A stretch of 64,000 bases of DNA, taken from positions 1 to 64,000 of IMG/VR virus record IMGVR_UViG_3300047476_002078; one strand, given 5' to 3'. A program made the position numbers and the translations under genes. This document shows positions 11,964-61,710 of the stretch, in pieces (the stretch's first letter is position 1; each line of letters opens with the position of its first letter). Under the pieces are notes generated by a model. That model was given only the letters and a program-made list of their open reading frames with translations. It had not been told where the DNA came from and made no database searches.

Positions 11964-12573
11964 TTTTTTTGGCAGGTATTCCAACATAAATACCACTTTC
12001 TGTTAAATTTTTGACAACTGCGGATTGAGCACCAGTAATTACATTTTCTGATATACAAATTTTTTCTCGAACCGCTGTTCCTGTTCCCAAAGAGGAATAT
12101 TTTCCGATAACTGTGTTACCTGAAATGTGACAGCCCGGATTTGCTGTTACATAATCATCAATTACTGCGTCGTGCCCAACAGTACAGTTAAGATTCAAAA
12201 CAACGTAATCCCCGATTTTAACATTAGTAGTGATTATACACCCTGCGGTTATAATCCCTCCTACACCTATATCAGCATCTTGAACTAAAGCTTTTGGGTG
12301 AACAAATGTTTTCATTGGCTTTAATCCGCTTTTCAATGCTTTTTCTACCATTATTTTTTTAACTTCGGGATTACCTACACCGATTATAAATTCAGCATTT
12401 TGAAATGAATCAAAGTTCCAATTTTTAACAACCTTGTAACTTTTATTTTTTATAATTATTTCTTCAATATTTGTGAAATCATCCACAAAAATAAAATCAG
12501 CATTAAAAGAATCTAAGTGAAAAAAGACTTCCCTTGCAAATCCCCCTGCTCCAAGAATAACTATGTTTTTCAT
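11956..12573 (-). CDS. NeuD/PglD-family sugar acetyltransferase
   Basis: ILGAGGFAREV N-terminus, hexapeptide repeats, VGHD, C-terminal GIPAK. Confidence 0.9.
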   Translation of the reverse strand: MKNIVILGAGGFAREVFFHLDSFNADFIFVDDFTNIEEIIIKNKSYKVVKNWNFDSFQNAEFIIGVGNPEVKKIMVEKALKSGLKPMKTFVHPKALVQDADIGVGGIITAGCIITTNVKIGDYVVLNLNCTVGHDAVIDDYVTANPGCHISGNTVIGKYSSLGTGTAVREKICISENVITGAQSAVVKNLTESGIYVGIPAKKIT

Positions 12574-14654
12574 GAAAGAGCCTCAATAATTCCATTGAAA
12601 ACTTCATCCATTTCTTCATTTGTAATAGTTTCGTAAAACGGTATGCACAATATTCTGTCTGACATGTTTTCAGTTTTTGACAAGTCGTTAAATGCCAAAT
12701 TATCTTTGAAAAAAGGCTGTGCGTGAATAGGTATGTAGTATATTCTGGTGTTAATACCTTTTTTGTTCAAAGATTCAATAACTAAATTTCTTTCTTCTTT
12801 ATTTGATAAAATAATAGGGTAAACCTGATAACCTGAATTAATATTTTTAATTGTTTTTATTGAACTTGTAGAAAATTTTTGTTGATAGTAATCGTGTTTT
12901 TGCTTTTTAATATTTATTTTATTTTCAATAGTATCCATAACAGATAGACCTATAGCAGCATGAAATTCAGAGCATTTTGCATTTGTACCCGATAAGGTTG
13001 AAACATTATTGGTAAAACCAAAATTTATAATTTTTCTGCATTTCTCAATAAAATTTGAATTTTTACTGGTCACTAAGCACCCTTCACCAATACCAAAAGT
13101 TTTGGTTATATGCAGACTGAAAATTTCGCAATCTCCTGCCGACCCTAATTTTGTTTCGTCACTGTACGATGCTCCAAGTGCAGCCGCCGAATCAAAAATT
13201 AAAATTAATCCATGTTTATTAGCAAAGTCTTCGTACTTTTTATAATCACATGTGTAGCCGAGAGCCTGAACGACAATCATGGCTTTTGTATTGGCAGTTA
13301 ATTTTTTTTCTGCGTTTTTAATACATAAATGAATACCTTCTTCTTCAATATCAACTAAGACAGGATTACATTCAGCGTTTAATACAGAATGTGCTGTAGC
13401 AGAAAACGTAAAAGATGGAATTAAAATATCACAGTTCTTTAAATCATGTGCTTTTATAGCAACAGTTAATCCTATTGTTGCGTTATTCATTAAAACTGGG
13501 ACATTATCAAGATTGAGATAGGACTTGAACCTTTCCTCTAACATTTTTACACAGGGTCCGTTGTTAGAGAATGTATTTGATTCATAGGAATCTACTAAAT
13601 ATTTAGCCCAATCTTTGATTTGTGGTGGGTTAGGTTTTAAAACAGGTATCTTTAAAAAAAGATCAGAGTCATCAAAAAATTTACTGGCGTAATTTGGCAA
13701 ATTTTTAATGTCGAATCTTTCGTATCTTTCAGAGATTTCTAAATTCACTTTAGAATTTATCTGAATTTCACTTAAAGCAGAGCTAGATATTATTGAATTT
13801 GGGACATTTACTGTAAAATGGTCTTGTTCTATTTTGTAAACATTCAAACTTAACCCATTAACTGAAATAGAATCTTCTATCTTTAAATCAGCTAGTATCT
13901 CTGGGCAAGAAATTATAAATTCTTTTGATTCCTCTAAGTTGTTAATTGAAGATACAGTCCCTATATTTTTGATTTGACCAGCAAACATATTTCCCTTCCT
14001 ATTTTGTATATCAACCCCAAATATAGGGTATTTATCTAAATCTTTGAAATGCCATCCGATTATTTCACCATTAGATAAAGAATTTGATCTTAAATTATCT
14101 ACGTTATTGACCGTAAAATGAAAAAGAGGGTCAAAATTCTTTTTTAGACACATTAAATTTTTACTATCTTGAATATTATTTTGAATTTTCAAATTTAAAA
14201 AATATCTAAAATTTTGGAGCTTGAAAACAATAGGCTCCTGATTATCTGTAAATAAAGCATGAGCTTCTCTTGTCCAACTCATTAATGTTTGATTATTAAA
14301 AACGATATTATCTTCGGAGAGTATGACAATATCTTCCGGTTGTGCAGAAGATAGAGCTTCTGACAGTTTTGAATAGTGGTGCGTTAAATTTTCAACAAGT
14401 GAATTTTCTGAAGGTAAGTCTATGACGCTGTACAAAATTTTATCTTTATACTTATCAAAAATGTCTTTATTTTCTTCAAACAGTAGAGCTTTCGGCTTTC
14501 CGTTATAATCTTGGTTACATTCTACGAAAACAAAATAATCAACGATGGAAAGTTCATAAACTAATGTTTCTAAAACTGTTAGGGTATGTTTACCGTAATT
14601 TACAATAGGTACACATAAAAAAACTTTTTTTCCAAATTTATTGCTTAATTCCAT
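12570..14654 (-). CDS. Fusion: GT17-like domain + riboflavin-synthase-alpha-like barrel + DegT/DnrJ sugar aminotransferase
   Basis: N: DYFVFVECN..NGKPK, GWHF; aa 223-306: MFAGQIKNIGTV..DSISVNG..VNLE; C: PSFTFSATA, FDSAAALG, SLHITKTFGIGEGC. Confidence 0.85.
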   Translation of the reverse strand: MELSNKFGKKVFLCVPIVNYGKHTLTVLETLVYELSIVDYFVFVECNQDYNGKPKALLFEENKDIFDKYKDKILYSVIDLPSENSLVENLTHHYSKLSEALSSAQPEDIVILSEDNIVFNNQTLMSWTREAHALFTDNQEPIVFKLQNFRYFLNLKIQNNIQDSKNLMCLKKNFDPLFHFTVNNVDNLRSNSLSNGEIIGWHFKDLDKYPIFGVDIQNRKGNMFAGQIKNIGTVSSINNLEESKEFIISCPEILADLKIEDSISVNGLSLNVYKIEQDHFTVNVPNSIISSSALSEIQINSKVNLEISERYERFDIKNLPNYASKFFDDSDLFLKIPVLKPNPPQIKDWAKYLVDSYESNTFSNNGPCVKMLEERFKSYLNLDNVPVLMNNATIGLTVAIKAHDLKNCDILIPSFTFSATAHSVLNAECNPVLVDIEEEGIHLCIKNAEKKLTANTKAMIVVQALGYTCDYKKYEDFANKHGLILIFDSAAALGASYSDETKLGSAGDCEIFSLHITKTFGIGEGCLVTSKNSNFIEKCRKIINFGFTNNVSTLSGTNAKCSEFHAAIGLSVMDTIENKINIKKQKHDYYQQKFSTSSIKTIKNINSGYQVYPIILSNKEERNLVIESLNKKGINTRIYYIPIHAQPFFKDNLAFNDLSKTENMSDRILCIPFYETITNEEMDEVFNGIIEALS

Positions 14655-21752: not shown

Positions 21753-22772
21753 ATGGATTACAAATTTGTAAAAGTGGAAATTGATAAAATGTATAAGCAA
21801 CTCCACAAATACGCTTCATTACCTGCGGAAAATTACCCTCCTGCTAATATAGCAAGTTGGATTAAACAGTGTAAAAAGGCTGGTCGGGATGATTTAGCAG
21901 ATAAAATTATGCAAGGTTGGAATAATTGTGTAGCTAAATATCCTCAAACTAGACTTAGATGGGATACAGCAACAGTTTTAGGGACTAACTCTGTTAAAAA
22001 GAATGTTTTTGGTGGAAAAGATGTAAATTTTGATGAGTGGTTCGCATCTCAAGGAGCACCTCAACAACAAGTACAAGAAGCTAAAAAAATTAAAGAGCCT
22101 AAAATAACTCTTCCTCCTATAGCTACCCCTTCTCCTGAAGAAACCCCTGAACAGTGGCAATCTGAAGCAGCTAAAACTAAAACTATGCTTGACCAAGGTG
22201 AGTCAGCTTTTAAAAATGTTGATGAGTTCATCACTTATTTAAAAAATACGGCGAGCGATCTGCAAAGAAAAATTAGTGATTACGGTCCGGGCGGTTCTAA
22301 AGAAAAAACTAAATCGGGAGCACCTCATAAATTTACAGAAAGGGTTCCAAAGTGGAAATCTGAGTTGGAAACATATTCTGCAAAAATAGAAGAAGTGGAG
22401 AAAAAAACAAAGCAAGCCAAAGAAAAATTTGATGACGCTAAAAAATCTTATGAAAAATCTCCAGCACTTACCGTTAAATATGAACAAAAAGCTCAAGATG
22501 CTTTAGAAGATGTTCTTAACTTTATTTTAAATGTTGAAGATTTTAATAAGCAAAAAGATATGCTGTTAAAGTTCCAAGACACATTAAAAAAGATGGACAG
22601 CAAAAAAGTAGCTTCCTTCGACAAAGAGGCAGCTTTTTGGGATGCCCTTTTTAAAGCTATGACCAACATGTTTGACTATATTTCAAAAGCTTGGAAAAAA
22701 TTAATTGACTGGATAAACGGTCTTTTCAAAGCTATTGATAAATTTGATGAACTTGCAAAAATAGATTTCTAA
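21753..22772 (+). CDS. Hypothetical coiled-coil protein with K-x-A motifs (head-internal candidate)
   Basis: RBS AAGGAG; HKYA at aa 18-21 and DKEAA near the C-terminus. Confidence 0.6.
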   Translation: MDYKFVKVEIDKMYKQLHKYASLPAENYPPANIASWIKQCKKAGRDDLADKIMQGWNNCVAKYPQTRLRWDTATVLGTNSVKKNVFGGKDVNFDEWFASQGAPQQQVQEAKKIKEPKITLPPIATPSPEETPEQWQSEAAKTKTMLDQGESAFKNVDEFITYLKNTASDLQRKISDYGPGGSKEKTKSGAPHKFTERVPKWKSELETYSAKIEEVEKKTKQAKEKFDDAKKSYEKSPALTVKYEQKAQDALEDVLNFILNVEDFNKQKDMLLKFQDTLKKMDSKKVASFDKEAAFWDALFKAMTNMFDYISKAWKKLIDWINGLFKAIDKFDELAKIDF

Positions 22773-22809: not shown

Positions 22810-22879
22810 ACCGTAAATTTTACCGTAAAATGAAATTTTATCTATAATCAAAACAACTAACCAAGGACGGAGGTTGTTT

Positions 22880-23635
22880 TTGAGAATAAAATATTTGCTA
22901 TCTAAGTATGATAAAGCTGTTCAAGTTGATAAATCTTTACCAATTCAAAAGCAAACTTTAATAGTATCCCAGCAATTAAAAAGTGTCCGAGACGATTTGT
23001 GCAAAAAGTCTAAAACCTTGAATGATGTCCTCGAAGCACAATACGCTTACATAATATCTTCTTTAAATCATAGAAATAGAATTTGGAAATATGACTACAT
23101 GTCCTTCCCTAGAAGAGTGGGAGAATTATGGGAGTCTTTCTGTAAAGCCGCCTTTTATAATGCACATGATGTAAGACATGTTAATGCCCCTGAATTTAAT
23201 GACATTAAAAAAGAAATAAAAAAATCTATCCCTAAAGAGATATGGCAGATTGTAGGAGAAGTTAATTTAAAAACAGACAGTCTTTTTTATACTGATCGTA
23301 AATTACATGTAATTGACCTTAAATCTAGTTTTAACAGTCATGAAAAAGGTAACATGCAAAGATTAAGGACAGTCGGGGCAGTTTACAAATTATGGAAGCC
23401 TCGCACAAAACTTTTGGTTTTAGTAAGAGAGACAGATAACAGCAATTATTTGGAGCATTTAGAAGAATTTTGGGAAGTAAAATGTGGTAAAGACGCTTAC
23501 AAAACGATTGAAAACTTTACTGGAGTGAATTTACGGAAATGGATTGATCGTAACGTAAATTTTGAAAAACATCTGGATAAAAACTTTTTTATTGACTTAA
23601 AGAAAAATGACCTAGAAAGTTATCTTAACTGGTAA
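22880..23635 (+). CDS. PD-(D/E)xK restriction-endonuclease-like protein
   Basis: GELWE..C, then TDSLF...IDLKSSF (D...D-x-K); GGAGG spacing favours the TTG at 22880. Confidence 0.6.
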   Translation: MRIKYLLSKYDKAVQVDKSLPIQKQTLIVSQQLKSVRDDLCKKSKTLNDVLEAQYAYIISSLNHRNRIWKYDYMSFPRRVGELWESFCKAAFYNAHDVRHVNAPEFNDIKKEIKKSIPKEIWQIVGEVNLKTDSLFYTDRKLHVIDLKSSFNSHEKGNMQRLRTVGAVYKLWKPRTKLLVLVRETDNSNYLEHLEEFWEVKCGKDAYKTIENFTGVNLRKWIDRNVNFEKHLDKNFFIDLKKNDLESYLNW

Positions 23636-27378: not shown

Positions 27379-27615
27379 TTATTTATTTTCAAATTCATCC
27401 CATAAAGATTGGCAAAAAGCCCAAGTTGCGTCTTCACTTGGAAAATATTTTCTAACCTTCTTATGACATTTAGTTCTCTTGTGCTCTACGTCTCCGACTA
27501 AAGTATCCCAAAATTGTTTTCTACTCCCTTCAGTCCAGCCTTTAGGCATATTTTTCCATTCTGTAGAAATTTTGTTTTCTAATTCTGAAATTTTTTCCAT
27601 TAAACTTTTTTTCAT
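27379..27615 (-). CDS. Small protein with EKISELENKIS leader (head-internal candidate)
   Basis: 78 aa; GWT..SRKQFW..H..TKC..AFC. Confidence 0.6.
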   Translation of the reverse strand: MKKSLMEKISELENKISTEWKNMPKGWTEGSRKQFWDTLVGDVEHKRTKCHKKVRKYFPSEDATWAFCQSLWDEFENK

Positions 27616-38021: not shown

Positions 38022-39196
38022 TATTTACTGATTATATGAAAAAAACAAACATTTTGTTAAGTTATCTAGTTACGGGTCTTCCAGATGAAGGGAAAACATC
38101 TTTTTCCATAGCTTTAGCCAAAATTTCGGGTGATTACTTTGTTAGTGGGTGTCAGCCTATTTTTAACCCTAAAAGCATAGTAATAATGTTGGATAGATCA
38201 TTTTACTTATTTATAGGAGAAAACCCAGCAACTACAAAATATTCAATAACTACAGCTATTCACAAAGATGCCAAGCTGGACAAAGACGAGTTTCTAAAAG
38301 TAGTAATTAAAGAAATTGATGAAATGTTAGAATACAACCCGAATCAGATCATAATAGAAGGCTACGTTTTAAATTTTATTAAAGAAGAAGTAGAAAATTA
38401 TTTAAAAGATAAAACATTATCTGCTCACATTAGAATGAGAAATTATGTAATACATTATTTGGATGAGGTTTATTCAACTAAGAGGTGCGAAAGTCCGAAT
38501 AGTTATACAGATGAAATAGTTGTAGCTTATAGAGATGCTATTCAATTGTTAAAACAAAAATTAGTTGAAGTTCACGGCAAAAACATTTTATCTCAAGTAA
38601 ATTATCAAGCTTTTCCTGACTTAGGAATAAATGTTAAAAATTCAGACAGCATTAAAAAATTTAAGAGCTTAAATCTAAAAAATTTACAAGACAAAAAAGT
38701 TTTGGACGTTGGGTGTAACCATGGGAGATTTTGCATTGAATCAATTAGGCTAGGTGCTTCCGTAGTTCATGGCATAGATAGTAACAAAAATTTTCTACAT
38801 ACTGCTTCAGCTTTAAATAATATTTTTTATCGCTATAACATTTCTTTTTTTGAATGTGATTTTTTAAATTTTAATCAGTCTAATTATGACATTATTATTG
38901 CTTGTTCCGTGTTTCATTATTTTAAAGAAAATCAACCTGAATTTTTTAAGAAAGCTTATGATTTGTTGGTTAAAGATGGTGTCTTAATTCTTGAAGCAGG
39001 AATATCTGATTTGCATCCAGATAAAGAATTTATTGAAAAGTATCAAAGAGGTGTGGACCCTACACCTTGTCACTTTCCAAATCATTTAGCTTTACTTGCC
39101 ATGGCTCAAGGCTTTAAGTGTGAATATCTAGGTAGTTCCGTTAATCAGCATGGGGATAGAATAAACAGGAAAGTTTATCATTTAAGGAAATTATAA
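38003..39196 (+). CDS. Class I SAM methyltransferase with N-terminal P-loop-like domain
   Basis: VTGLPDEGKTS; KVLDVGCNHG..GID and SVFHY motifs; start may be the ATG at 38036. Confidence 0.78.
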   Translation: MYGNPLIFTDYMKKTNILLSYLVTGLPDEGKTSFSIALAKISGDYFVSGCQPIFNPKSIVIMLDRSFYLFIGENPATTKYSITTAIHKDAKLDKDEFLKVVIKEIDEMLEYNPNQIIIEGYVLNFIKEEVENYLKDKTLSAHIRMRNYVIHYLDEVYSTKRCESPNSYTDEIVVAYRDAIQLLKQKLVEVHGKNILSQVNYQAFPDLGINVKNSDSIKKFKSLNLKNLQDKKVLDVGCNHGRFCIESIRLGASVVHGIDSNKNFLHTASALNNIFYRYNISFFECDFLNFNQSNYDIIIACSVFHYFKENQPEFFKKAYDLLVKDGVLILEAGISDLHPDKEFIEKYQRGVDPTPCHFPNHLALLAMAQGFKCEYLGSSVNQHGDRINRKVYHLRKL

Positions 39197-41187
39197 TGTC
39201 TATTAAAATAGCAAAAATTTTAGCAAAAATAGCTTTAACTTATGAAGAGTATAAAAATCTTCATCCTAAAACTAAAAAAACTCCAGATGATCCACTGTTT
39301 TCAAAAGAAAAAGAAAAAAAGAAAATAAAAAAAGATGTTCCTAATAATACAAAAAATAAAAAGGAAGAATCTAAACAAATTAAAAAGACTACCAAAGAAA
39401 TGTCTGACGACGAAATCGTAGAAAAATATAAGCCTACTTTTTCTGGGGGCGAGTTTCAGAGAAAAATGAATTTTGATGAACTTGGAAAGTATGCGGAAAA
39501 AATGTCTTCAGATGATTTAGCTTACCATCTTGTAAATAGCCCGATACCAGAGGATGAAGGGCATCCGTTTTTTCAATCGGCTAATTATAAGATTGGGAGA
39601 TTTAACGGATTTATGTTACAGCTTTTCAATCCCAACGTGAGCAAAGATGAAAGAACTTCGCTCGCCAGTTACATATTAGATAAAGCTGGAGTTTCTTTTG
39701 TTGGGGGAAGAACTTTAAATCAATTTATAACAGCCTTAGCGAAAAAAGGGTTAATTGATAAAAGTCTTTCTGAAGAATCAGAGTATGATAAATTAAGAAC
39801 TGATCTTTATTATGGAAATATATCTGACTCAGAAGAAATAAGAAAATACGCTAAAGAAAGAGATGGGAAAAGTATGAAGTGGGCGTATCAATTAAAAACT
39901 AATCCGTTCACTCCTTCGGATGTTCTAGTCAAAATTTATCAAGAACATGGTTCAGACTCTTCCTATAAAGAAGTTTTAAGACATAAAAATTTTCCAATAG
40001 AAACACTATTAAAAATAAGACCCCCTACATCTTCTGATAATTATTCTTTTTATTTAGATAGAGAAGATGTACCAAGTCAAATTCAACAACAAATAATTGA
40101 AACTTACATCATGAAGGGTAATGGTTTTTCAATACCTAAAAACTTTAATTTTTCAGAAAAACAACTTTCTGAATTATGGAGAAAAAACCTAGCTTCTCAC
40201 AAAAAATCAAACAAAGAAAAAGCTCAAAAAAGCCAAGACGGATTTATTTACCCTACTGATACAGAGTACGGTCTTTCAAAATGGGCAGAGCATCCAAACT
40301 GTCCCAAAGAGATACTTACAGAAATATTAAATTGGGAAAATAAGCAAGATAGAGAAGGTGGAGTACATTTCTCAATATCAAAAGCAAAAGTTTCTGCTTA
40401 TCAAAACTTAGTTAAAAGAAATATTTTAAAAAAAGAAGATATTGTTAATAAAGTAAAAGAGACTTTAAATTTACACGGTGATGAAGAAATTCTTCAAAAA
40501 TTTGGAGAAAGAGCTTACTGTTCTGAAAATCAAAAAAATGTTGTAAAAAGAACTATTACTAAAGTTTCTCCTGAAGAAAAATTAAAAATACAAGAAGAGA
40601 TGAATAAGACCGCAGTTCACGACGATTTTGATTATGATGTTTTAGAAGTATATGAGATAGATAAAGAGCCTCACAAAGACTTTGAAAATACCGAAAAAAG
40701 AATCAATAATGTTTTTAAAAATGTGTATCATGGTACATCATTTTCAAATGCAGGAGGTATTTTGGCTGACGGTATCAATACTGATTCAAAAGCTAGAACA
40801 GGTCAAATGTTTGGGCAGGGTTTTTATTTAGCTTCAGCCTCTTCAAAAGCAGTTCAATATGCGTCTGATAACTTCTCCAAGAATGAAGGGGAGGGCGTAG
40901 TTTTTCTTTTGGACGCAAGTATGGGAAAAACGACTGAGATGAAATACGGAAGACCTGCTAACGATGATATATCTCGTGTTGAATGGAAAGATGAAATCAA
41001 AAAAAAGAAAGAAGAGTACGAGAAAAATACAGGCAAGACCACTAACACTTATTGGCATTTAGAGCACGATTCAGTTATAGCTAAAGCAGGCATGTCTTTA
41101 GATCACGATGAATATGTGGTTAAGGATTCTTCTCAACTGAGAATAAAAAGAATAGTTCACGTTAAAAAGAAACCAAAAGCAGGCTAA
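39196..41187 (+). CDS. PARP-family (ARTD, H-Y-E) ADP-ribosyltransferase with long N-terminal region
   Basis: VYHGT..NAGGILADG..TGQMFGQGFYLA..SKAVQYA..VFLLDA.MG..HDEYVV; helical NP.TP..L repeats upstream. Confidence 0.9.
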   Translation: MSIKIAKILAKIALTYEEYKNLHPKTKKTPDDPLFSKEKEKKKIKKDVPNNTKNKKEESKQIKKTTKEMSDDEIVEKYKPTFSGGEFQRKMNFDELGKYAEKMSSDDLAYHLVNSPIPEDEGHPFFQSANYKIGRFNGFMLQLFNPNVSKDERTSLASYILDKAGVSFVGGRTLNQFITALAKKGLIDKSLSEESEYDKLRTDLYYGNISDSEEIRKYAKERDGKSMKWAYQLKTNPFTPSDVLVKIYQEHGSDSSYKEVLRHKNFPIETLLKIRPPTSSDNYSFYLDREDVPSQIQQQIIETYIMKGNGFSIPKNFNFSEKQLSELWRKNLASHKKSNKEKAQKSQDGFIYPTDTEYGLSKWAEHPNCPKEILTEILNWENKQDREGGVHFSISKAKVSAYQNLVKRNILKKEDIVNKVKETLNLHGDEEILQKFGERAYCSENQKNVVKRTITKVSPEEKLKIQEEMNKTAVHDDFDYDVLEVYEIDKEPHKDFENTEKRINNVFKNVYHGTSFSNAGGILADGINTDSKARTGQMFGQGFYLASASSKAVQYASDNFSKNEGEGVVFLLDASMGKTTEMKYGRPANDDISRVEWKDEIKKKKEEYEKNTGKTTNTYWHLEHDSVIAKAGMSLDHDEYVVKDSSQLRIKRIVHVKKKPKAG

Positions 41188-56521: not shown

Positions 56522-56597
56522 TGGAGCGGGCGAAGGGGTTTGAACCCTCGACATCCAGATTGGAAATCTGGCACTCTACCAACTGAGCTACGCCCGC
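56522..56597 (-). tRNA. trnG: tRNA-Gly(TCC)
   Basis: 76-nt cloverleaf GCGGGCG..., anticodon arm CCAGA-TTTCCAA-TCTGG, T-loop TTCAAAC, encoded CCA. Confidence 0.96.
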
Positions 56598-58376: not shown

Positions 58377-58387
58377 TTTTATATGGG

Positions 58388-58855
58388 TCAGAAATCTGAC
58401 CCATATAATTTTTTTTCTAGTTCAGCGATCTTTTTTTCTAAGTGTGACTTTTTCTTTATCTCTTTAGCTTTATCACCAAATGTAGGAGTGTTTACAGGTT
58501 TACCTGTATTAGGTTTCTCCTTCTCTTTTTTCTTTTTATTCTTGGCAAGCTCCGCTCTTTCATCTTTGGATAGATCATGAGCTTTTTGTCTTGGCATACA
58601 TTTAAGAGGGTCTTTACCGTTATTAGTAATGTCTTTCCAGTCTGGGTCTTTGCTTATTCCACAAGGTCCGACTATATCCCCTGCCTCATAAGTCTTTTTT
58701 TCACCGTCATCTTTTGTAACAGTGTTTTTAACAGGAGTAATAGCTATCCAATCGCCGTAAGGAGCTTTGCCTTTAGCTTTTGATTTACCTTGACCGTGAC
58801 CTTTAAACCAAGCATCCAAACCTCCGTGTTCGGAGCCTTTATCTCTATCAGCCAT
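58388..58855 (-). CDS. Basic hypothetical protein (head-internal candidate)
   Basis: GGLDAWF, GPCG and KCMP..KA motifs; C-terminal LEKKIAELEKKL. Confidence 0.65.
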   Translation of the reverse strand: MADRDKGSEHGGLDAWFKGHGQGKSKAKGKAPYGDWIAITPVKNTVTKDDGEKKTYEAGDIVGPCGISKDPDWKDITNNGKDPLKCMPRQKAHDLSKDERAELAKNKKKKEKEKPNTGKPVNTPTFGDKAKEIKKKSHLEKKIAELEKKLYGSDF

Positions 58856-58857
58856 AT

Positions 58858-59667
58858 TTAATCTGCTTTTTTATAGGTAAGAATAGGTTTTCCGCCTTTA
58901 ACAATTGTGAATCCGCCTTCATCATCAAATTTAATTTCACTTGCTTTTGGAAATTCTAACCAAGAGTCGCCATTAGGAGTTTTGAAAGCAACTGCCTTGG
59001 ACTGAATTTTTGAAACTTCTCTTAATCCTAAATCTTTGTTCAATATGTGGTTAAAACAATTCCACTTAGAACCTATAGTTAAAGATTTCTTGAGGTCTGA
59101 TAGACTTGATTTTTTCTTCCACCCTCCACCAAGCTCTTTATAAGTTTTTGAAGCCCATCCATTTCCGTAGGCACTTGGAAAAATTTCAAAACCTTTACCA
59201 TCGTTAGGTCCATTAATTTCTTTTCCGTTATGTTTAATAGATTTAACTTCGCCTTTAGTAAGTTTCTGTACCTTTTCCCACAATGAAGGGTTTGTAGGCT
59301 CATTGTCTCCTGCAAATTTCTCATTAGACTTTTTGCTTAAAACATCTGATACACTGAAACCTTTTTCCCACATCTTGCACGACCAATACTTAGCTTTCCA
59401 TTTTGGTCCGGGGTCAACATCGCATTGATGTCTTGATCTAAAGTTTTTTCTAGCATCGTCGTTATCACGACGGATTTCCATATTAGGGTCGCCAAAATTT
59501 ACTTTAACTACATTACCTTTATCGTTTTTAACATAAACACTAAATTTTTTAGGACCATCTGGAGTTCGGAAAGGCTTATTTAAAGTTACTTTTTTACCTT
59601 GATATTCAGATTCACCTGCTATCTTCATTTCCATTTCAAAAATTTCAAACTCTATATCTTTTTTCAT
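58858..59667 (-). CDS. Modular basic protein (three small domains joined by K-x-A/S linkers)
   Basis: KVTLNKPFR..VKVNFGD..NFRSRHQC..YWSC; PSAYGNGWASKTYKELGG.W; third domain after KKKS. Confidence 0.7.
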   Translation of the reverse strand: MKKDIEFEIFEMEMKIAGESEYQGKKVTLNKPFRTPDGPKKFSVYVKNDKGNVVKVNFGDPNMEIRRDNDDARKNFRSRHQCDVDPGPKWKAKYWSCKMWEKGFSVSDVLSKKSNEKFAGDNEPTNPSLWEKVQKLTKGEVKSIKHNGKEINGPNDGKGFEIFPSAYGNGWASKTYKELGGGWKKKSSLSDLKKSLTIGSKWNCFNHILNKDLGLREVSKIQSKAVAFKTPNGDSWLEFPKASEIKFDDEGGFTIVKGGKPILTYKKAD

Positions 59668-59675
59668 TTTATCTC

Positions 59676-61100
59676 CTAACGGGAATTACCCCAACGTAAA
59701 ACTTTGGCAGCACTAATGAAATCTTGTAATGATGATTTGATTAAATTAGTGTCGTATTTTTTCCCTTTAGGGAACTTTATGTGAAATCTAAAACTTACTG
59801 CCCATGCTTTTGGAATATCATGGTGACTATCAGAAGACATTGTAACAATGTTGTCTTTTACTATAACTCTTGGAGTTCGATAAGTATCGGTTCCATCGTA
59901 ATAGTCTTCTTCTTGGTAGGTTAAGCTACCTGTAACAAATCCACCTGCGTTTTTAATTCCCTTAACAGCACTATCTATTCGAGATTTGAGTGAGCTTTCC
60001 TCAGATTTAGAAAAATAAAGTTTTGTTTTCCAAGAATCATCAATTTCTTCATATCCCTCGACAGTAATCAAATTTTCATTTTCTGATTCTTTTACTTTAA
60101 TATGTTTTCCATCTTCCATTTTACGAAATTCATGCTGATTTTCTTCAGTTTTATTTTTCAGTTTCTTATATCCACCATCAACTAACATTCTTTGTAATTT
60201 TTCTACTTGAAACAAATTGTCTGTTTTTGATTGAAGTGTACTCTTATCTTCAAAAAATAATTCTTTTACATTGTCATGATTGCCTTCTCCTAAGCTGAAT
60301 TGATAGTAAGGAAGACCTTCTGTAAAAGTCATAACAATAGATGCAAAAAGAGGTTTTTGTCCTTTAATGTTAATTACTGCCCCTGATTTAACATCAATGC
60401 TGTAGTTCATTGGATTTTGTCTTGCATAGTTTCTGTACTTAACATCAAAATCTAACCCTGAACCTCTTGTTATGTTTTCTTTTACTAATGATTGAAATTT
60501 TTTTACTAAATCAGATAAATCTTTAGGGGGTGTTTTTGATGAATTAAATTTGTCTTTTTGACTTTCAATATCTTTTTCAGCTTTTGTCTTATATTTTTCA
60601 GCTTCAGATTTTAATTTTGCTAGATCAGAATTATTTTCTTTCCCTTGGTTGAAAGCTCTAATTACATTCTGAATTATAAAAACGGCTTGTCGAAGTTTTA
60701 CTAACTTTTGAGATAAATCTTCGGCTCCTGCTTTTTTTGATGCTCTTATTGAAGATGAATACTCAATTGTAGCCACAAGATCATAAACATCATTTTCCTG
60801 TGGTTTTGAGGGACCAAAAGAAGCGTTAATGTAAAGTAAGAATCCTCCCTTATCTCCATGTGGAATTTCTACGTACCATTTTTTTCCATCTGGCATAGGT
60901 GAATGTTCACTATTAGGTATGTGGTAATAATCAGTTTTTTGTATGTTATAGTCTATTCCATTATCAGAAAGGTCTTTTAAAATACTTTGAACAGGCTTCC
61001 ACGTATCATCTCTAAAAAATCCCTTAGTCTTGGGATATATTATAGACTGTAAGTAAGACTTCGCTTTATGCTTTGATAACTCGTTAAACATGACGTTCAC
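59676..61100 (-). CDS. Modular hypothetical protein with K-x-A motifs
   Basis: 474 aa from the GTG; the ATG at 61091 fits the GAGG spacing; SKHKA and SKKAG motifs. Confidence 0.6.
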   Translation of the reverse strand: MNVMFNELSKHKAKSYLQSIIYPKTKGFFRDDTWKPVQSILKDLSDNGIDYNIQKTDYYHIPNSEHSPMPDGKKWYVEIPHGDKGGFLLYINASFGPSKPQENDVYDLVATIEYSSSIRASKKAGAEDLSQKLVKLRQAVFIIQNVIRAFNQGKENNSDLAKLKSEAEKYKTKAEKDIESQKDKFNSSKTPPKDLSDLVKKFQSLVKENITRGSGLDFDVKYRNYARQNPMNYSIDVKSGAVINIKGQKPLFASIVMTFTEGLPYYQFSLGEGNHDNVKELFFEDKSTLQSKTDNLFQVEKLQRMLVDGGYKKLKNKTEENQHEFRKMEDGKHIKVKESENENLITVEGYEEIDDSWKTKLYFSKSEESSLKSRIDSAVKGIKNAGGFVTGSLTYQEEDYYDGTDTYRTPRVIVKDNIVTMSSDSHHDIPKAWAVSFRFHIKFPKGKKYDTNLIKSSLQDFISAAKVLRWGNSR

Positions 61101-61140: not shown

Positions 61141-61710
61141 TTAATCCCAATCCCAAGGGTCATAAAAAAATTTATCGGAATTGCTCCCAAGTTTATCAAA
61201 TCTTTCATGTTTTATACATTCACGTTCAAACATTCTATGACGCTTTGCAGATTTTTTTCTACTTATCTGGCGAGCCGTACTACGTGATCTTTTATAGTCT
61301 CTTCTTTTATCCTTTTTCCAAGAGCTTTTATTTTTTGTATCCTTTTTTTTGTGATGCTGTTTACGAACAAACTTTTGTTTTTCCCTGAACTTCTTGACAG
61401 TTGCTTTTTTAAAGTAAGTTTTAAAAAAAATATCTTTACCGTTTTTAATTTTCTGGCAAAATTCAAAAAAACTCATTTTAAGGCACATCGAAAATATACC
61501 TTCATCGTACAGGTTTTGCAGTAGTGGTAATTTTAATTCATGCTTATCTGAGTAGATATATTTGAAAGATTTTAAGCAGAAATATTTTTCAGGTGGATAA
61601 GGTTCACCGCATTTTTCAACGTAAAACAAATAACAAAAACGAAGGTAATTGTTTTGCTTTTCTTCAGTCCAAACAGGTTTCCATGCAGGATTAGGATAAA
61701 TTTTTGACAT
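61141..61710 (-). CDS. Very basic hypothetical protein
   Basis: RBS AAGGAG; K/R-rich C-terminal half. Confidence 0.6.
   Translation of the reverse strand: MSKIYPNPAWKPVWTEEKQNNYLRFCYLFYVEKCGEPYPPEKYFCLKSFKYIYSDKHELKLPLLQNLYDEGIFSMCLKMSFFEFCQKIKNGKDIFFKTYFKKATVKKFREKQKFVRKQHHKKKDTKNKSSWKKDKRRDYKRSRSTARQISRKKSAKRHRMFERECIKHERFDKLGSNSDKFFYDPWDWD

What the first reader, a model, noticed from the sequence alone, without database searches (positions are those of the whole stretch)
58388..61100. Three-gene operon of 'beads-on-a-string' proteins: candidate viral polyproteins
Seen: 58858 contains three unrelated small basic domains separated by MKIA|G, EKFA|G and KKKS|S; 59676 has SKHKA and SKKA|G; 58388 ends in the leader-like LEKKIAELEKKL. 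From memory (not searched), the KVTLNKPFR..RH.C and PSAY.N.W..K.YK..GG domains occur as separate small genes in marine T4-like phages. Inference: formerly independent head proteins concatenated and released by K-x-A cleavage.
Basis: partly seen in the sequence, partly recalled or inferred. Interest (0 to 1): 0.65.

Follow-up and report, generated by a model that had tools for sequence, protein, structure and literature searches.

The report
Mosaic phage proteins from shuffled modules
Three adjacent genes of a 356-kb freshwater jumbo phage encode proteins built from at least seven small virus-only domains, one resembling the widespread, function-less Tlr6F protein; these domains occur elsewhere as separate genes or in other orders, and cutting them apart into head proteins is possible but not shown.

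Summary
Three tightly packed minus-strand genes (C 59676-61091, B 58858-59667, A 58388-58855) encode beads-on-a-string proteins. I delimited seven modules. B has D1 (Tlr6F/DUF5754-like), D2 (DUF5872-like) and D3. A has a DUF6321-like domain. C has Cn, Cm and Cc. Five modules (D1, D2, D3, Cn, Cc) and the Cm+Cc pair occur elsewhere as stand-alone genes. D1, D2, Cn and the A-domain also occur in other fusion orders. SKHKA does not. Proteins elsewhere carry A-domain, D2 and D1 on one chain, so genes A and B are a split version of a recurrent unit. The genome is a freshwater jumbo phage with a family A polymerase, not a marine T4-like phage. The polyprotein reading is only partly supported. K-x-A-G-like motifs are enriched before modules but absent from about 90% of junctions. 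The operon lies about 240 kb from the head genes. Nothing shows cleavage. If cutting occurs, A-G-E|S, A-G-D|N and G-A-E|D fit the A-x-E rule of giant-phage prohead proteases better than K-x-A|G. One lead favours a head-interior role: D1 is fused to the prohead protease next to the portal gene in a Mu-like head module. Folds match no solved structure, and function remains unknown.

The parts
59676..61091 (-). Three modules: Cn, Cm, Cc.
   Evidence: relatives
60738..61091 (-). Module Cn (C res 1-118). A widespread viral module: 39 stand-alone, 43 C-terminal, 7 N-terminal and 4 internal among 93 hits.
60720..60737 (-). Junction K-K-A-G-A-E (C471 res 119-124). The stand-alone homologues P0140 and P0142 begin here. 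The L016 orthologue reads K-I-A-G-V-E.
59679..60719 (-). Modules Cm+Cc (C res 125-471), a unit found as stand-alone proteins of about 350 aa. Cc alone (res ~319-471, 59679-60137) occurs as 150-aa genes, e.g. L019:2782-3234.
   Evidence: weak YbjN/DUF2299-like shape for Cc, a lead only
59617..59667 (-). B leader (res 1-17), acidic, predicted helix 3-15, ends K-I-A-G-E.
59365..59616 (-). Module D1 (B res 18-101): Tlr6F/DUF5754-like hub domain, 65-86% identical in more than 7,800 proteins. Invariant residues include C82 and C97; H80 is nearly invariant.
59314..59364 (-). Linker 1 (B res 102-118), ends E-K-F-A-G before D-N-E-P-T-N-P. Low model confidence.
59110..59313 (-). Module D2 (B res 119-186): DUF5872-like, long form with a 19-aa insertion. 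Model pLDDT is 92-96.
58861..59109 (-). Module D3 (B res 187-269): rare. One stand-alone 87-aa homologue in a faecal phage record, 46% identical.
58472..58855 (-). Gene A, A-domain (res 1-128): DUF6321-like by transitive profile match. Invariant W36, C65, C86. Fused to D2 and/or D1 in other phages.
58391..58471 (-). A tail (res 129-155): Lys/Glu-rich helix (KIAELEKK). In L016 it continues into an extra module of about 115 aa (346 nt absent from the window).
58379..58408 (.). 13-bp hairpin with T-run between convergent gene A and the AAA ATPase gene. Probable two-way terminator.
61141..61710 (-). Upstream same-strand ORF (189 aa, extremely basic C-terminal half), possibly the first gene of the transcription unit. 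The whole 647-nt cassette is absent from L016.
   Evidence: no family hit

Best explanation
The locus is a co-transcribed cassette (C-B-A, perhaps led by the 189-aa ORF). It encodes mosaic proteins made by fusion and fission of at least seven small, autonomous, virus-specific modules.

Shown:
- D1, D2, D3, Cn and Cc each exist elsewhere as their own gene, and Cm+Cc exists as a stand-alone unit. The A-domain is stand-alone only in gene A and its orthologue.
- D1, D2, Cn and the A-domain exist in other orders and with other partners.
- The trio A-domain + D2 + D1 recurs on single chains as A-D2-D1 and A-D1-D2. The pairs D2-A, A-D2 and D2-D1 also occur. Genes A and B are therefore a split form of one recurrent unit and should act in the same process.
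- Module-sized cassettes come and go between close strains.

Inferred:
- The products work as tethered multi-module proteins joined by flexible Lys/Ser-rich or helical linkers.
- D1 acts as a hub or adaptor domain. It is basic, extremely conserved and carries invariant Cys and near-invariant His. It carries variable partners, including prohead protease, cytidylyltransferase plus PAP2, DUF5824, ChaB and ParB-like domains.
- The most likely setting is the virion interior or the first minutes of infection, in the manner of polyvalent or internal head proteins.
- Proteolytic separation is not needed to explain the architecture and is not shown.
For: Gene packing, ribosome-binding sites and terminator.

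D1: phrog_7595; stand-alone genes; more than 7,800 fusion proteins with D1 at the N-terminus, middle or C-terminus.

Architectures by my own module HMMs.

D2 alone and D2 + A-domain fusions. D3 alone.

C modules alone and recombined.

Pfam partners across 103 and 88 relatives. Atlas and BFVD partners.

Indels of whole modules between L016 and the window.

Linkers are modelled with low confidence and domains with high confidence.

Each module is single-copy in the genome.

The D1 core recruits contigs of many other genomes at 85% or more nucleotide identity.

D1 is fused to a Mu-like protease downstream of a Mu portal gene.
Against: No function is demonstrated for any module. No solved fold matches: Foldseek best E 0.37 and 0.49; VIA best Z 2.2 for D1 and 4.9 for D2-D3. 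The complex test of the A-domain with D2 gave no verdict. The virion or early-infection setting rests on fusions seen in other phages. Here the operon lies far from the head module, and homologues elsewhere lie by replication genes. Transcription evidence is two short metatranscriptome contigs only. Junction motifs that resemble protease sites leave room for processing.
Confidence: 0.55

Rival explanations
1. True polyproteins or propeptide-bearing head-interior proteins. The leader of B acts as a capsid-targeting sequence. The phage's head maturation protease cuts after an acidic residue in [A/G/S]-x-[E/D] at the junctions: A-G-E17|S, A-G-D121|N in B and G-A-E124|D in C. This releases small basic domains inside the capsid for ejection with the DNA. 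It is the reader's idea with the scissile bond moved by one to three residues.
For: The genome encodes a head maturation protease homologue (phrog_18299, E 2e-12). Its relatives include jumbo-phage proteases. Giant-phage protease gp245 of SPN3US cuts after A-X-E and removes N-terminal propeptides of 20-24 residues or of 111-254 residues (PMC10052503). A[GSA][DE] occurs only 109 times in the proteome, yet sits at both N-side boundaries in B. Internal D1 copies are preceded by [AGS]-x-E in 41 of 60 cases and have E at that position in 58 of 60. N-terminal copies have E in 5 of 14 and never have the full motif. Pre-module windows are 13-fold enriched in h-A-[GSA]-[DE]. D1 is fused to prohead proteases within a head module. 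A few Tlr6F peptides were seen in PgVV virions, below threshold.
Against: The motifs are short: [AGS]-x-E occurs once per 83 residues. They are absent from most junctions. The E before D1 may simply belong to the domain. The N-terminal D1 set is mostly one clade. The D1-to-D2 site has Asp, not Glu, and reads S-G-D in the orthologue. The D2-to-D3 junction has no candidate site. The specificity of this phage's protease is unknown. The operon is not in the head module.
Confidence: 0.25
2. Unrelated accessory genes that merely lie together. The modules are independent small 'moron'-type domains fused at random, with no shared process and no particular localisation.
For: No C module is ever found fused to D1, D2 or the A-domain. 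The Cn-containing gene lies at another genomic position in a related phage (L020). D3 is rare. Partner sets are very diverse.
Against: The trio A-domain + D2 + D1 recurs on one chain in several orders. C-B-A synteny is kept in L016 and in lake, wastewater and subsurface strains. Gene spacing of 8 and 2 nt implies coupled expression. Cn and D1 share the partner DUF5661.
Confidence: 0.12

Closest known systems
Polyvalent proteins of phages and conjugative elements (Iyer et al. 2017, PMC5512222)
   Same: Several unrelated domains sit on one chain. There is extensive shuffling and mosaicism. A few hub domains take many partners. Those proteins are predicted to be packaged and delivered with the DNA, and some are processed by peptidases. 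D1 relatives carry prohead-protease and weak ParB_N domains.
   Different: None of the hallmark domains was found in A, B or C: no zincin MPTase, MuF, ART, ParB, primase or nuclease. The modules here are tiny, at 70-150 aa. There is no embedded peptidase. Linkage to a portal or terminase is absent at this locus.
Internal or ejection proteins of T4 and of giant phages (SPN3US, phiKZ) that carry propeptides removed by the prohead protease
   Same: Small basic proteins with short N-terminal leaders. Junctions resemble A-X-E sites. A protease homologue is present in the genome.
   Different: Known substrates lose a propeptide. They are not cut into several functional beads. No virion data exist here. 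The genes are far from the head module. The T4 leader comparison is from my memory only and was not tested.
Tlr6F / DUF5754 small proteins of polinton-like viruses, virophages, giant viruses and phages
   Same: D1 relatives hit PF19058 over the same stretch: 39 of 103 relatives, best E 1.7e-4. The protein is described as ubiquitous, small and without known fold or function (PMC4642659, PMC12220804). The BFVD search gives weak shape matches to small proteins of giant viruses.
   Different: B269 itself does not reach the Pfam model. All hits by relatives are below the gathering score. Here the domain is one bead of a three-domain protein rather than a stand-alone gene.
Polyproteins of RNA viruses and retroviruses
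   Same: Concatenated functional units on one translation product.
   Different: Those encode their own protease within the chain and have proven cleavage maps. Here there is no protease domain and no evidence of cleavage.

Membership tests
DUF5754 / Tlr6F (PF19058) | Match to the Pfam model at or above the gathering score (27.4 bits) | tested here: not met
   B269 gives no hit at E<=0.1. A six-frame search of the genome gives none at E<=1.
DUF5754 / Tlr6F (PF19058) | Homology by transitive or profile evidence | tested here: inconclusive
   39 of 103 relatives hit the model on the D1 stretch, best E 1.7e-4, all below cut-off. Weak BFVD shape matches to giant-virus small proteins, probability 0.57-0.91.
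DUF5872 (PF19197) | Match to the Pfam model at or above the gathering score (27.5 bits) | tested here: not met
   No hit for B269. 13 of 103 relatives hit, best E 7.7e-9. In the three relatives inspected the match covers only model positions 1-53 of 116.
DUF6321 (PF19846) | Match of the A-domain to the family | tested here: inconclusive
   A155 has no direct hit. P0132 hits PF19846 at 1.3e-24, and my A-domain HMM matches its residues 11-74 at 2.4e-20.
Polyvalent proteins (Iyer 2017) | Two to fifteen disparate domains on one chain with shuffled architectures | tested here: met
Polyvalent proteins (Iyer 2017) | Hallmark conflict domains (MPTase, MuF, ART, ParB, nucleases, primase) or an embedded peptidase | tested here: not met
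   No such family in A, B or C. Found only in distant D1 relatives.
Polyvalent proteins (Iyer 2017) | Packaging into the capsid and delivery with the DNA | not testable with these tools
   Needs virion proteomics.
Prohead-protease substrates (T4 IP / SPN3US type) | Sequence matching the protease motif at the end of an N-terminal leader | tested here: met
   A-G-E17 in B, G-A-E124 in C. The pattern has low specificity.
Prohead-protease substrates (T4 IP / SPN3US type) | A prohead protease of the matching class in the same genome | tested here: inconclusive
   Protease homologue at G000 298039-299670. Its class and specificity were not determined. The Pfam S77 search was silent, including in the controls.
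Prohead-protease substrates (T4 IP / SPN3US type) | Cleaved products present in virions | not testable with these tools
   No proteome available.

The most novel reading that the evidence does not exclude
The Tlr6F-like domain D1 is a capsid-interior anchor or targeting module. These mosaic genes are genuine phage polyproteins. The head maturation protease cuts them at [A/G/S]-x-[E/D] junctions into several small basic proteins that travel with the DNA into the host. This would give a first function and a testable mechanism to one of the most widespread uncharacterised protein families of DNA viruses, found from phages to polinton-like and giant viruses.
Probability: 0.15. Interest if true: 0.7.

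Novelty: new member of a known kind. Interest (0 to 1): 0.35.

Why it matters
Domain-shuffled phage proteins of unknown function are common, so the locus itself is ordinary. Three things give it some value:
- It shows cleanly that a handful of DUF-type viral modules (DUF5754/Tlr6F-like, DUF5872-like, DUF6321-like, and Cn) form one recombining network, with D1 as a hub. I found no paper describing this in the library searched.
- The split and fused forms of A-domain + D2 + D1 give a functional-linkage prediction that can be tested.
- The fusion of D1 to a prohead protease inside a head module, together with the protease-like junction motifs, turns the question 'what does Tlr6F do?' into a concrete experiment.

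Tried and rejected
Sequence and family searches that gave nothing:
- Pfam, PHROGs and NCBIfam gave no family for A or C, and only phrog_7595 for B.
- tblastn of A and C against INPHARED found no match.
- The search for related loci with C in IMG/VR found none.
- PDB sequence search found none.
- Searches of the genome for T4 gp23, T4 gp21 and the NCLDV capsid found nothing, but the controls were silent too, so these are uninformative.

Structure:
- Fold searches of the D1 and D2-D3 models against the PDB found nothing meaningful: Foldseek E >= 0.37; VIA Z <= 4.9.
- The Atlas shape hit of Cc to YbjN/DUF2299 comes from a poor model (pLDDT 0.53). I kept it as a lead only.
- The complex prediction of A155 (1-130) with D2 scored 0.00. 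That is no verdict and is evidence neither for nor against binding.
- MAFFT placed the D2 pieces on top of D1 in alignments A2 and A3. I discarded those alignments and folded the domains separately. hhalign then showed no relation between D1 and D2.

Ideas dropped:
- I looked for the B leader elsewhere in the proteome. I found only weak look-alikes: 27379-27615, E 8, and G000 295672-296394, E 15. Neither is significant.
- I thought the extra module of the L016 A-orthologue looked GNAT-like by eye. Pfam gave nothing, so I make no claim.
- I considered internal translation starts at the junctions. No Met or Val codon lies at the D1/D2 or D2/D3 boundaries.
Full report
**Setting.** The window is the first 64 kb of a 355,874-bp virus record with direct terminal repeats. 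It is 34% G+C and 89% coding.
- It encodes a family A DNA polymerase, ribonucleotide reductase, a full-length Lon protease, NAD-dependent ligase, two PARP-domain proteins and SNF2 helicases.
- Its head genes are a major head protein (phrog_2522), a portal and a head maturation protease homologue (phrog_18299). The capsid and protease genes lie at 298-303 kb and the portal gene at 195 kb.
- It is therefore a jumbo tailed phage and not obviously T4-like.
- Near-identical or related DNA occurs in freshwater, lake, wastewater and subsurface metagenomes, not marine ones.

**The genes.** Three minus-strand ORFs are packed with gaps of 8 and 2 nt. An AGGAG precedes the start of B.
- C most likely starts at the ATG at 61091. 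A GAGGTG lies just upstream, and the orthologue starts at the equivalent Met.
- A 13-bp hairpin with a T-run closes the unit against the convergent AAA ATPase gene.
- A same-strand ORF for a very basic 189-aa protein lies 50 nt upstream of C. A promoter-like site lies before that ORF.
- A metatranscriptome holds two short contigs inside A and C. This is weak evidence of transcription.

**Protein B.** B has a 17-residue acidic leader, then D1 (18-101), a linker, D2 (119-186) and D3 (187-269). The three domains are unrelated to one another (hhalign probability under 2%) and all basic.
- AlphaFold models give a four-stranded sheet plus helices for D1 (pLDDT 79) and a very confident D2 (92-96). 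D3 is weaker, and the linkers are modelled as disordered.
- D1 matches phrog_7595. It occurs as an 85-133-aa gene in roseophages, pelagiphages (including the T4-like HTVC008M) and a Nitrosopumilus spindle-shaped virus.
- D1 also occurs at the N-terminus, middle or C-terminus of more than 7,800 proteins of 148-470 aa, at 65-86% identity in all but a few of the 120 listed.
- The D1 coding core alone recruits many foreign contigs at 85% or more nucleotide identity.
- Of 103 relatives, 39 touch Pfam DUF5754 below threshold. DUF5754 is the Tlr6F family, noted as ubiquitous and function-less in polinton-like viruses, virophages, giant viruses and phages. 13 relatives touch DUF5872 on the D2 stretch. 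B itself reaches neither model.
- D2 stands alone in P0121, a 95-aa protein on a 182-kb contig. D3 stands alone as an 87-aa ORF in a faecal phage record.

**Proteins A and C.** Both are modular too.
- The first 128 residues of A form a domain with invariant W36, C65 and C86. It is transitively DUF6321-like.
- That domain is fused after D2 in P0122 (80% identity to A) and in P0125. It is fused before D2 and D1 in several other proteins.
- My module HMMs find the architectures A-D2-D1, A-D1-D2, D2-A, A-D2 and D2-D1. A and B together therefore encode a unit that elsewhere is a single chain.
The 346 nt coding for that module are cleanly absent here.
- In C, Cn (1-118) is a widespread module: 39 hits stand alone, 43 are C-terminal, 7 N-terminal and 4 internal.
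- Cm+Cc (from residue ~121) occurs as stand-alone proteins of about 350 aa that begin exactly at the K-K-A-G-A-E junction. Cc also occurs as 150-aa genes.
- SKHKA is not a junction. It belongs to the conserved start of Cn.
- Every module is single-copy in this genome.

**The cleavage idea.**
- Over 166 non-redundant windows preceding modules, [KR]-h-A-[GSAKR] is 9-fold and h-A-[GSA]-[DE] 13-fold denser than in the rest of the same proteins. They occur in only 12% and 8% of windows.
- The orthologue has K-I-S-G at the D1/D2 junction.
- A better fit to known enzymology is cleavage after the acidic residue: A-G-E|S, A-G-D|N and G-A-E|D. The giant-phage protease gp245 cuts after A-X-E and removes short or long N-terminal propeptides. 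This genome has a protease homologue with jumbo-phage relatives.
- Internal D1 copies are preceded by [AGS]-x-E in 41 of 60 cases. N-terminal copies never are, but these are largely one clade.
- [AGS]-x-E is frequent, at 1.2% of positions. The protease's specificity is unknown, and nothing shows processing.

**Where the proteins might act.**
- Against a head role: the operon lies among AAA ATPase, HNH and tRNA genes, about 240 kb from the head module. Homologues in an abundant myovirus-like contig and in a cyanophage lie by SSB, endonuclease VII, ThyX and primase genes.
- For a head role: in one Mu-like head module, D1 is fused to the N-terminus of the Mu-type prohead protease. The protease gene lies one gene (238 aa) downstream of the portal gene. 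A BFVD entry joins D1 to XkdF. In roseophage CRP-901 the D1 gene lies in a block that ends in a putative head protein. A virophage study saw a few Tlr6F peptides in particles.
- Atlas and BFVD neighbours show D1 on long proteins with cytidylyltransferase, PAP2, DUF5824 and ChaB. This fits a hub or adaptor role.

**Structure and binding tests.** They did not help. No solved fold resembles D1, D2 or D3. The complex test of the A-domain with D2 returned no verdict.

**Verdict.** The 'head polyprotein cut at K-x-A' part is unproven, and in its stated form unlikely. The closest known concept is the polyvalent protein of phages, but the hallmark domains are absent, so I do not file the locus there. 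The locus is a new member of the ordinary class of mosaic phage proteins. Its Tlr6F-like hub domain is a worthwhile lead.

Noticed in passing
window 61141-61710 (-): 189-aa ORF with a Cys/aromatic-rich N-half and an extremely Lys/Arg-rich C-half. No family hit. The 647-nt cassette that holds it is absent from the syntenic contig L016.
   Followed up: partly
window 59470-59607: The D1 core recruits many unrelated contigs at 85% or more nucleotide identity in lake, wastewater and subsurface metagenomes. Summed contig depth reaches 47-241 in this bin, against about 5-11 in most flanking bins. This is unusual nucleotide-level conservation of a small viral domain across genomes.
   Followed up: partly
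window 39196-41187 (+) and G000 86903-89050 (+): Two large proteins (663 and 715 aa) with C-terminal PARP catalytic domains (E 7e-24 and 4e-23) in a phage genome.
   Followed up: no
G000 260983-263355 (+) (L011:983-3355): A complete Lon protease (substrate-binding, AAA+, lid and S16 domains) encoded by the phage.
   Followed up: no
G000 192265-194982 (+) and 303557-305389 (-): A 905-aa ORF with LAGLIDADG and weak Hint matches, possibly an intein. A 610-aa homing/HNH endonuclease lies directly after the major head protein gene (302637-303506).
   Followed up: no
window 27379-27615 (-): 78-aa ORF whose first 19 residues resemble the leader of B (MKK..E.I.E.E.KI[AS].E, 47% identity, E 8). It ends in S-T-E. 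The match is not significant on its own.
   Followed up: partly
window 12570-14654 (-): 694-aa fusion of glycosyltransferase-17-like, lumazine-binding and DegT/DnrJ aminotransferase domains. This suggests phage-encoded sugar modification.
   Followed up: no
relatives of module Cn (P0181, P0202, P0213, P0205 and others): Many Cn modules, stand-alone or internal, are preceded by a conserved amphipathic helix of the type E-L-L-R-V-A-K-S-L-I-A-G about 8-12 residues before the core. It is absent from C in this window.
   Followed up: partly
window 58971 (D3 coding region): Related strains and L016 carry an 18-nt insertion (6 aa) in D3. This is a strain-level indel inside the module.
   Followed up: partly
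window 56522-56597 (-): tRNA-Gly (TCC), about 1.8 kb from the operon's 3' end.
   Followed up: no
L020 (soil metagenome contig): A relative keeps synteny with window 21.4-24 kb but carries the Cn-containing gene P0141 inserted between the homologues of ORFs 21753-22772 and 22874-23635. The Cn module is therefore mobile within related genomes.
   Followed up: partly
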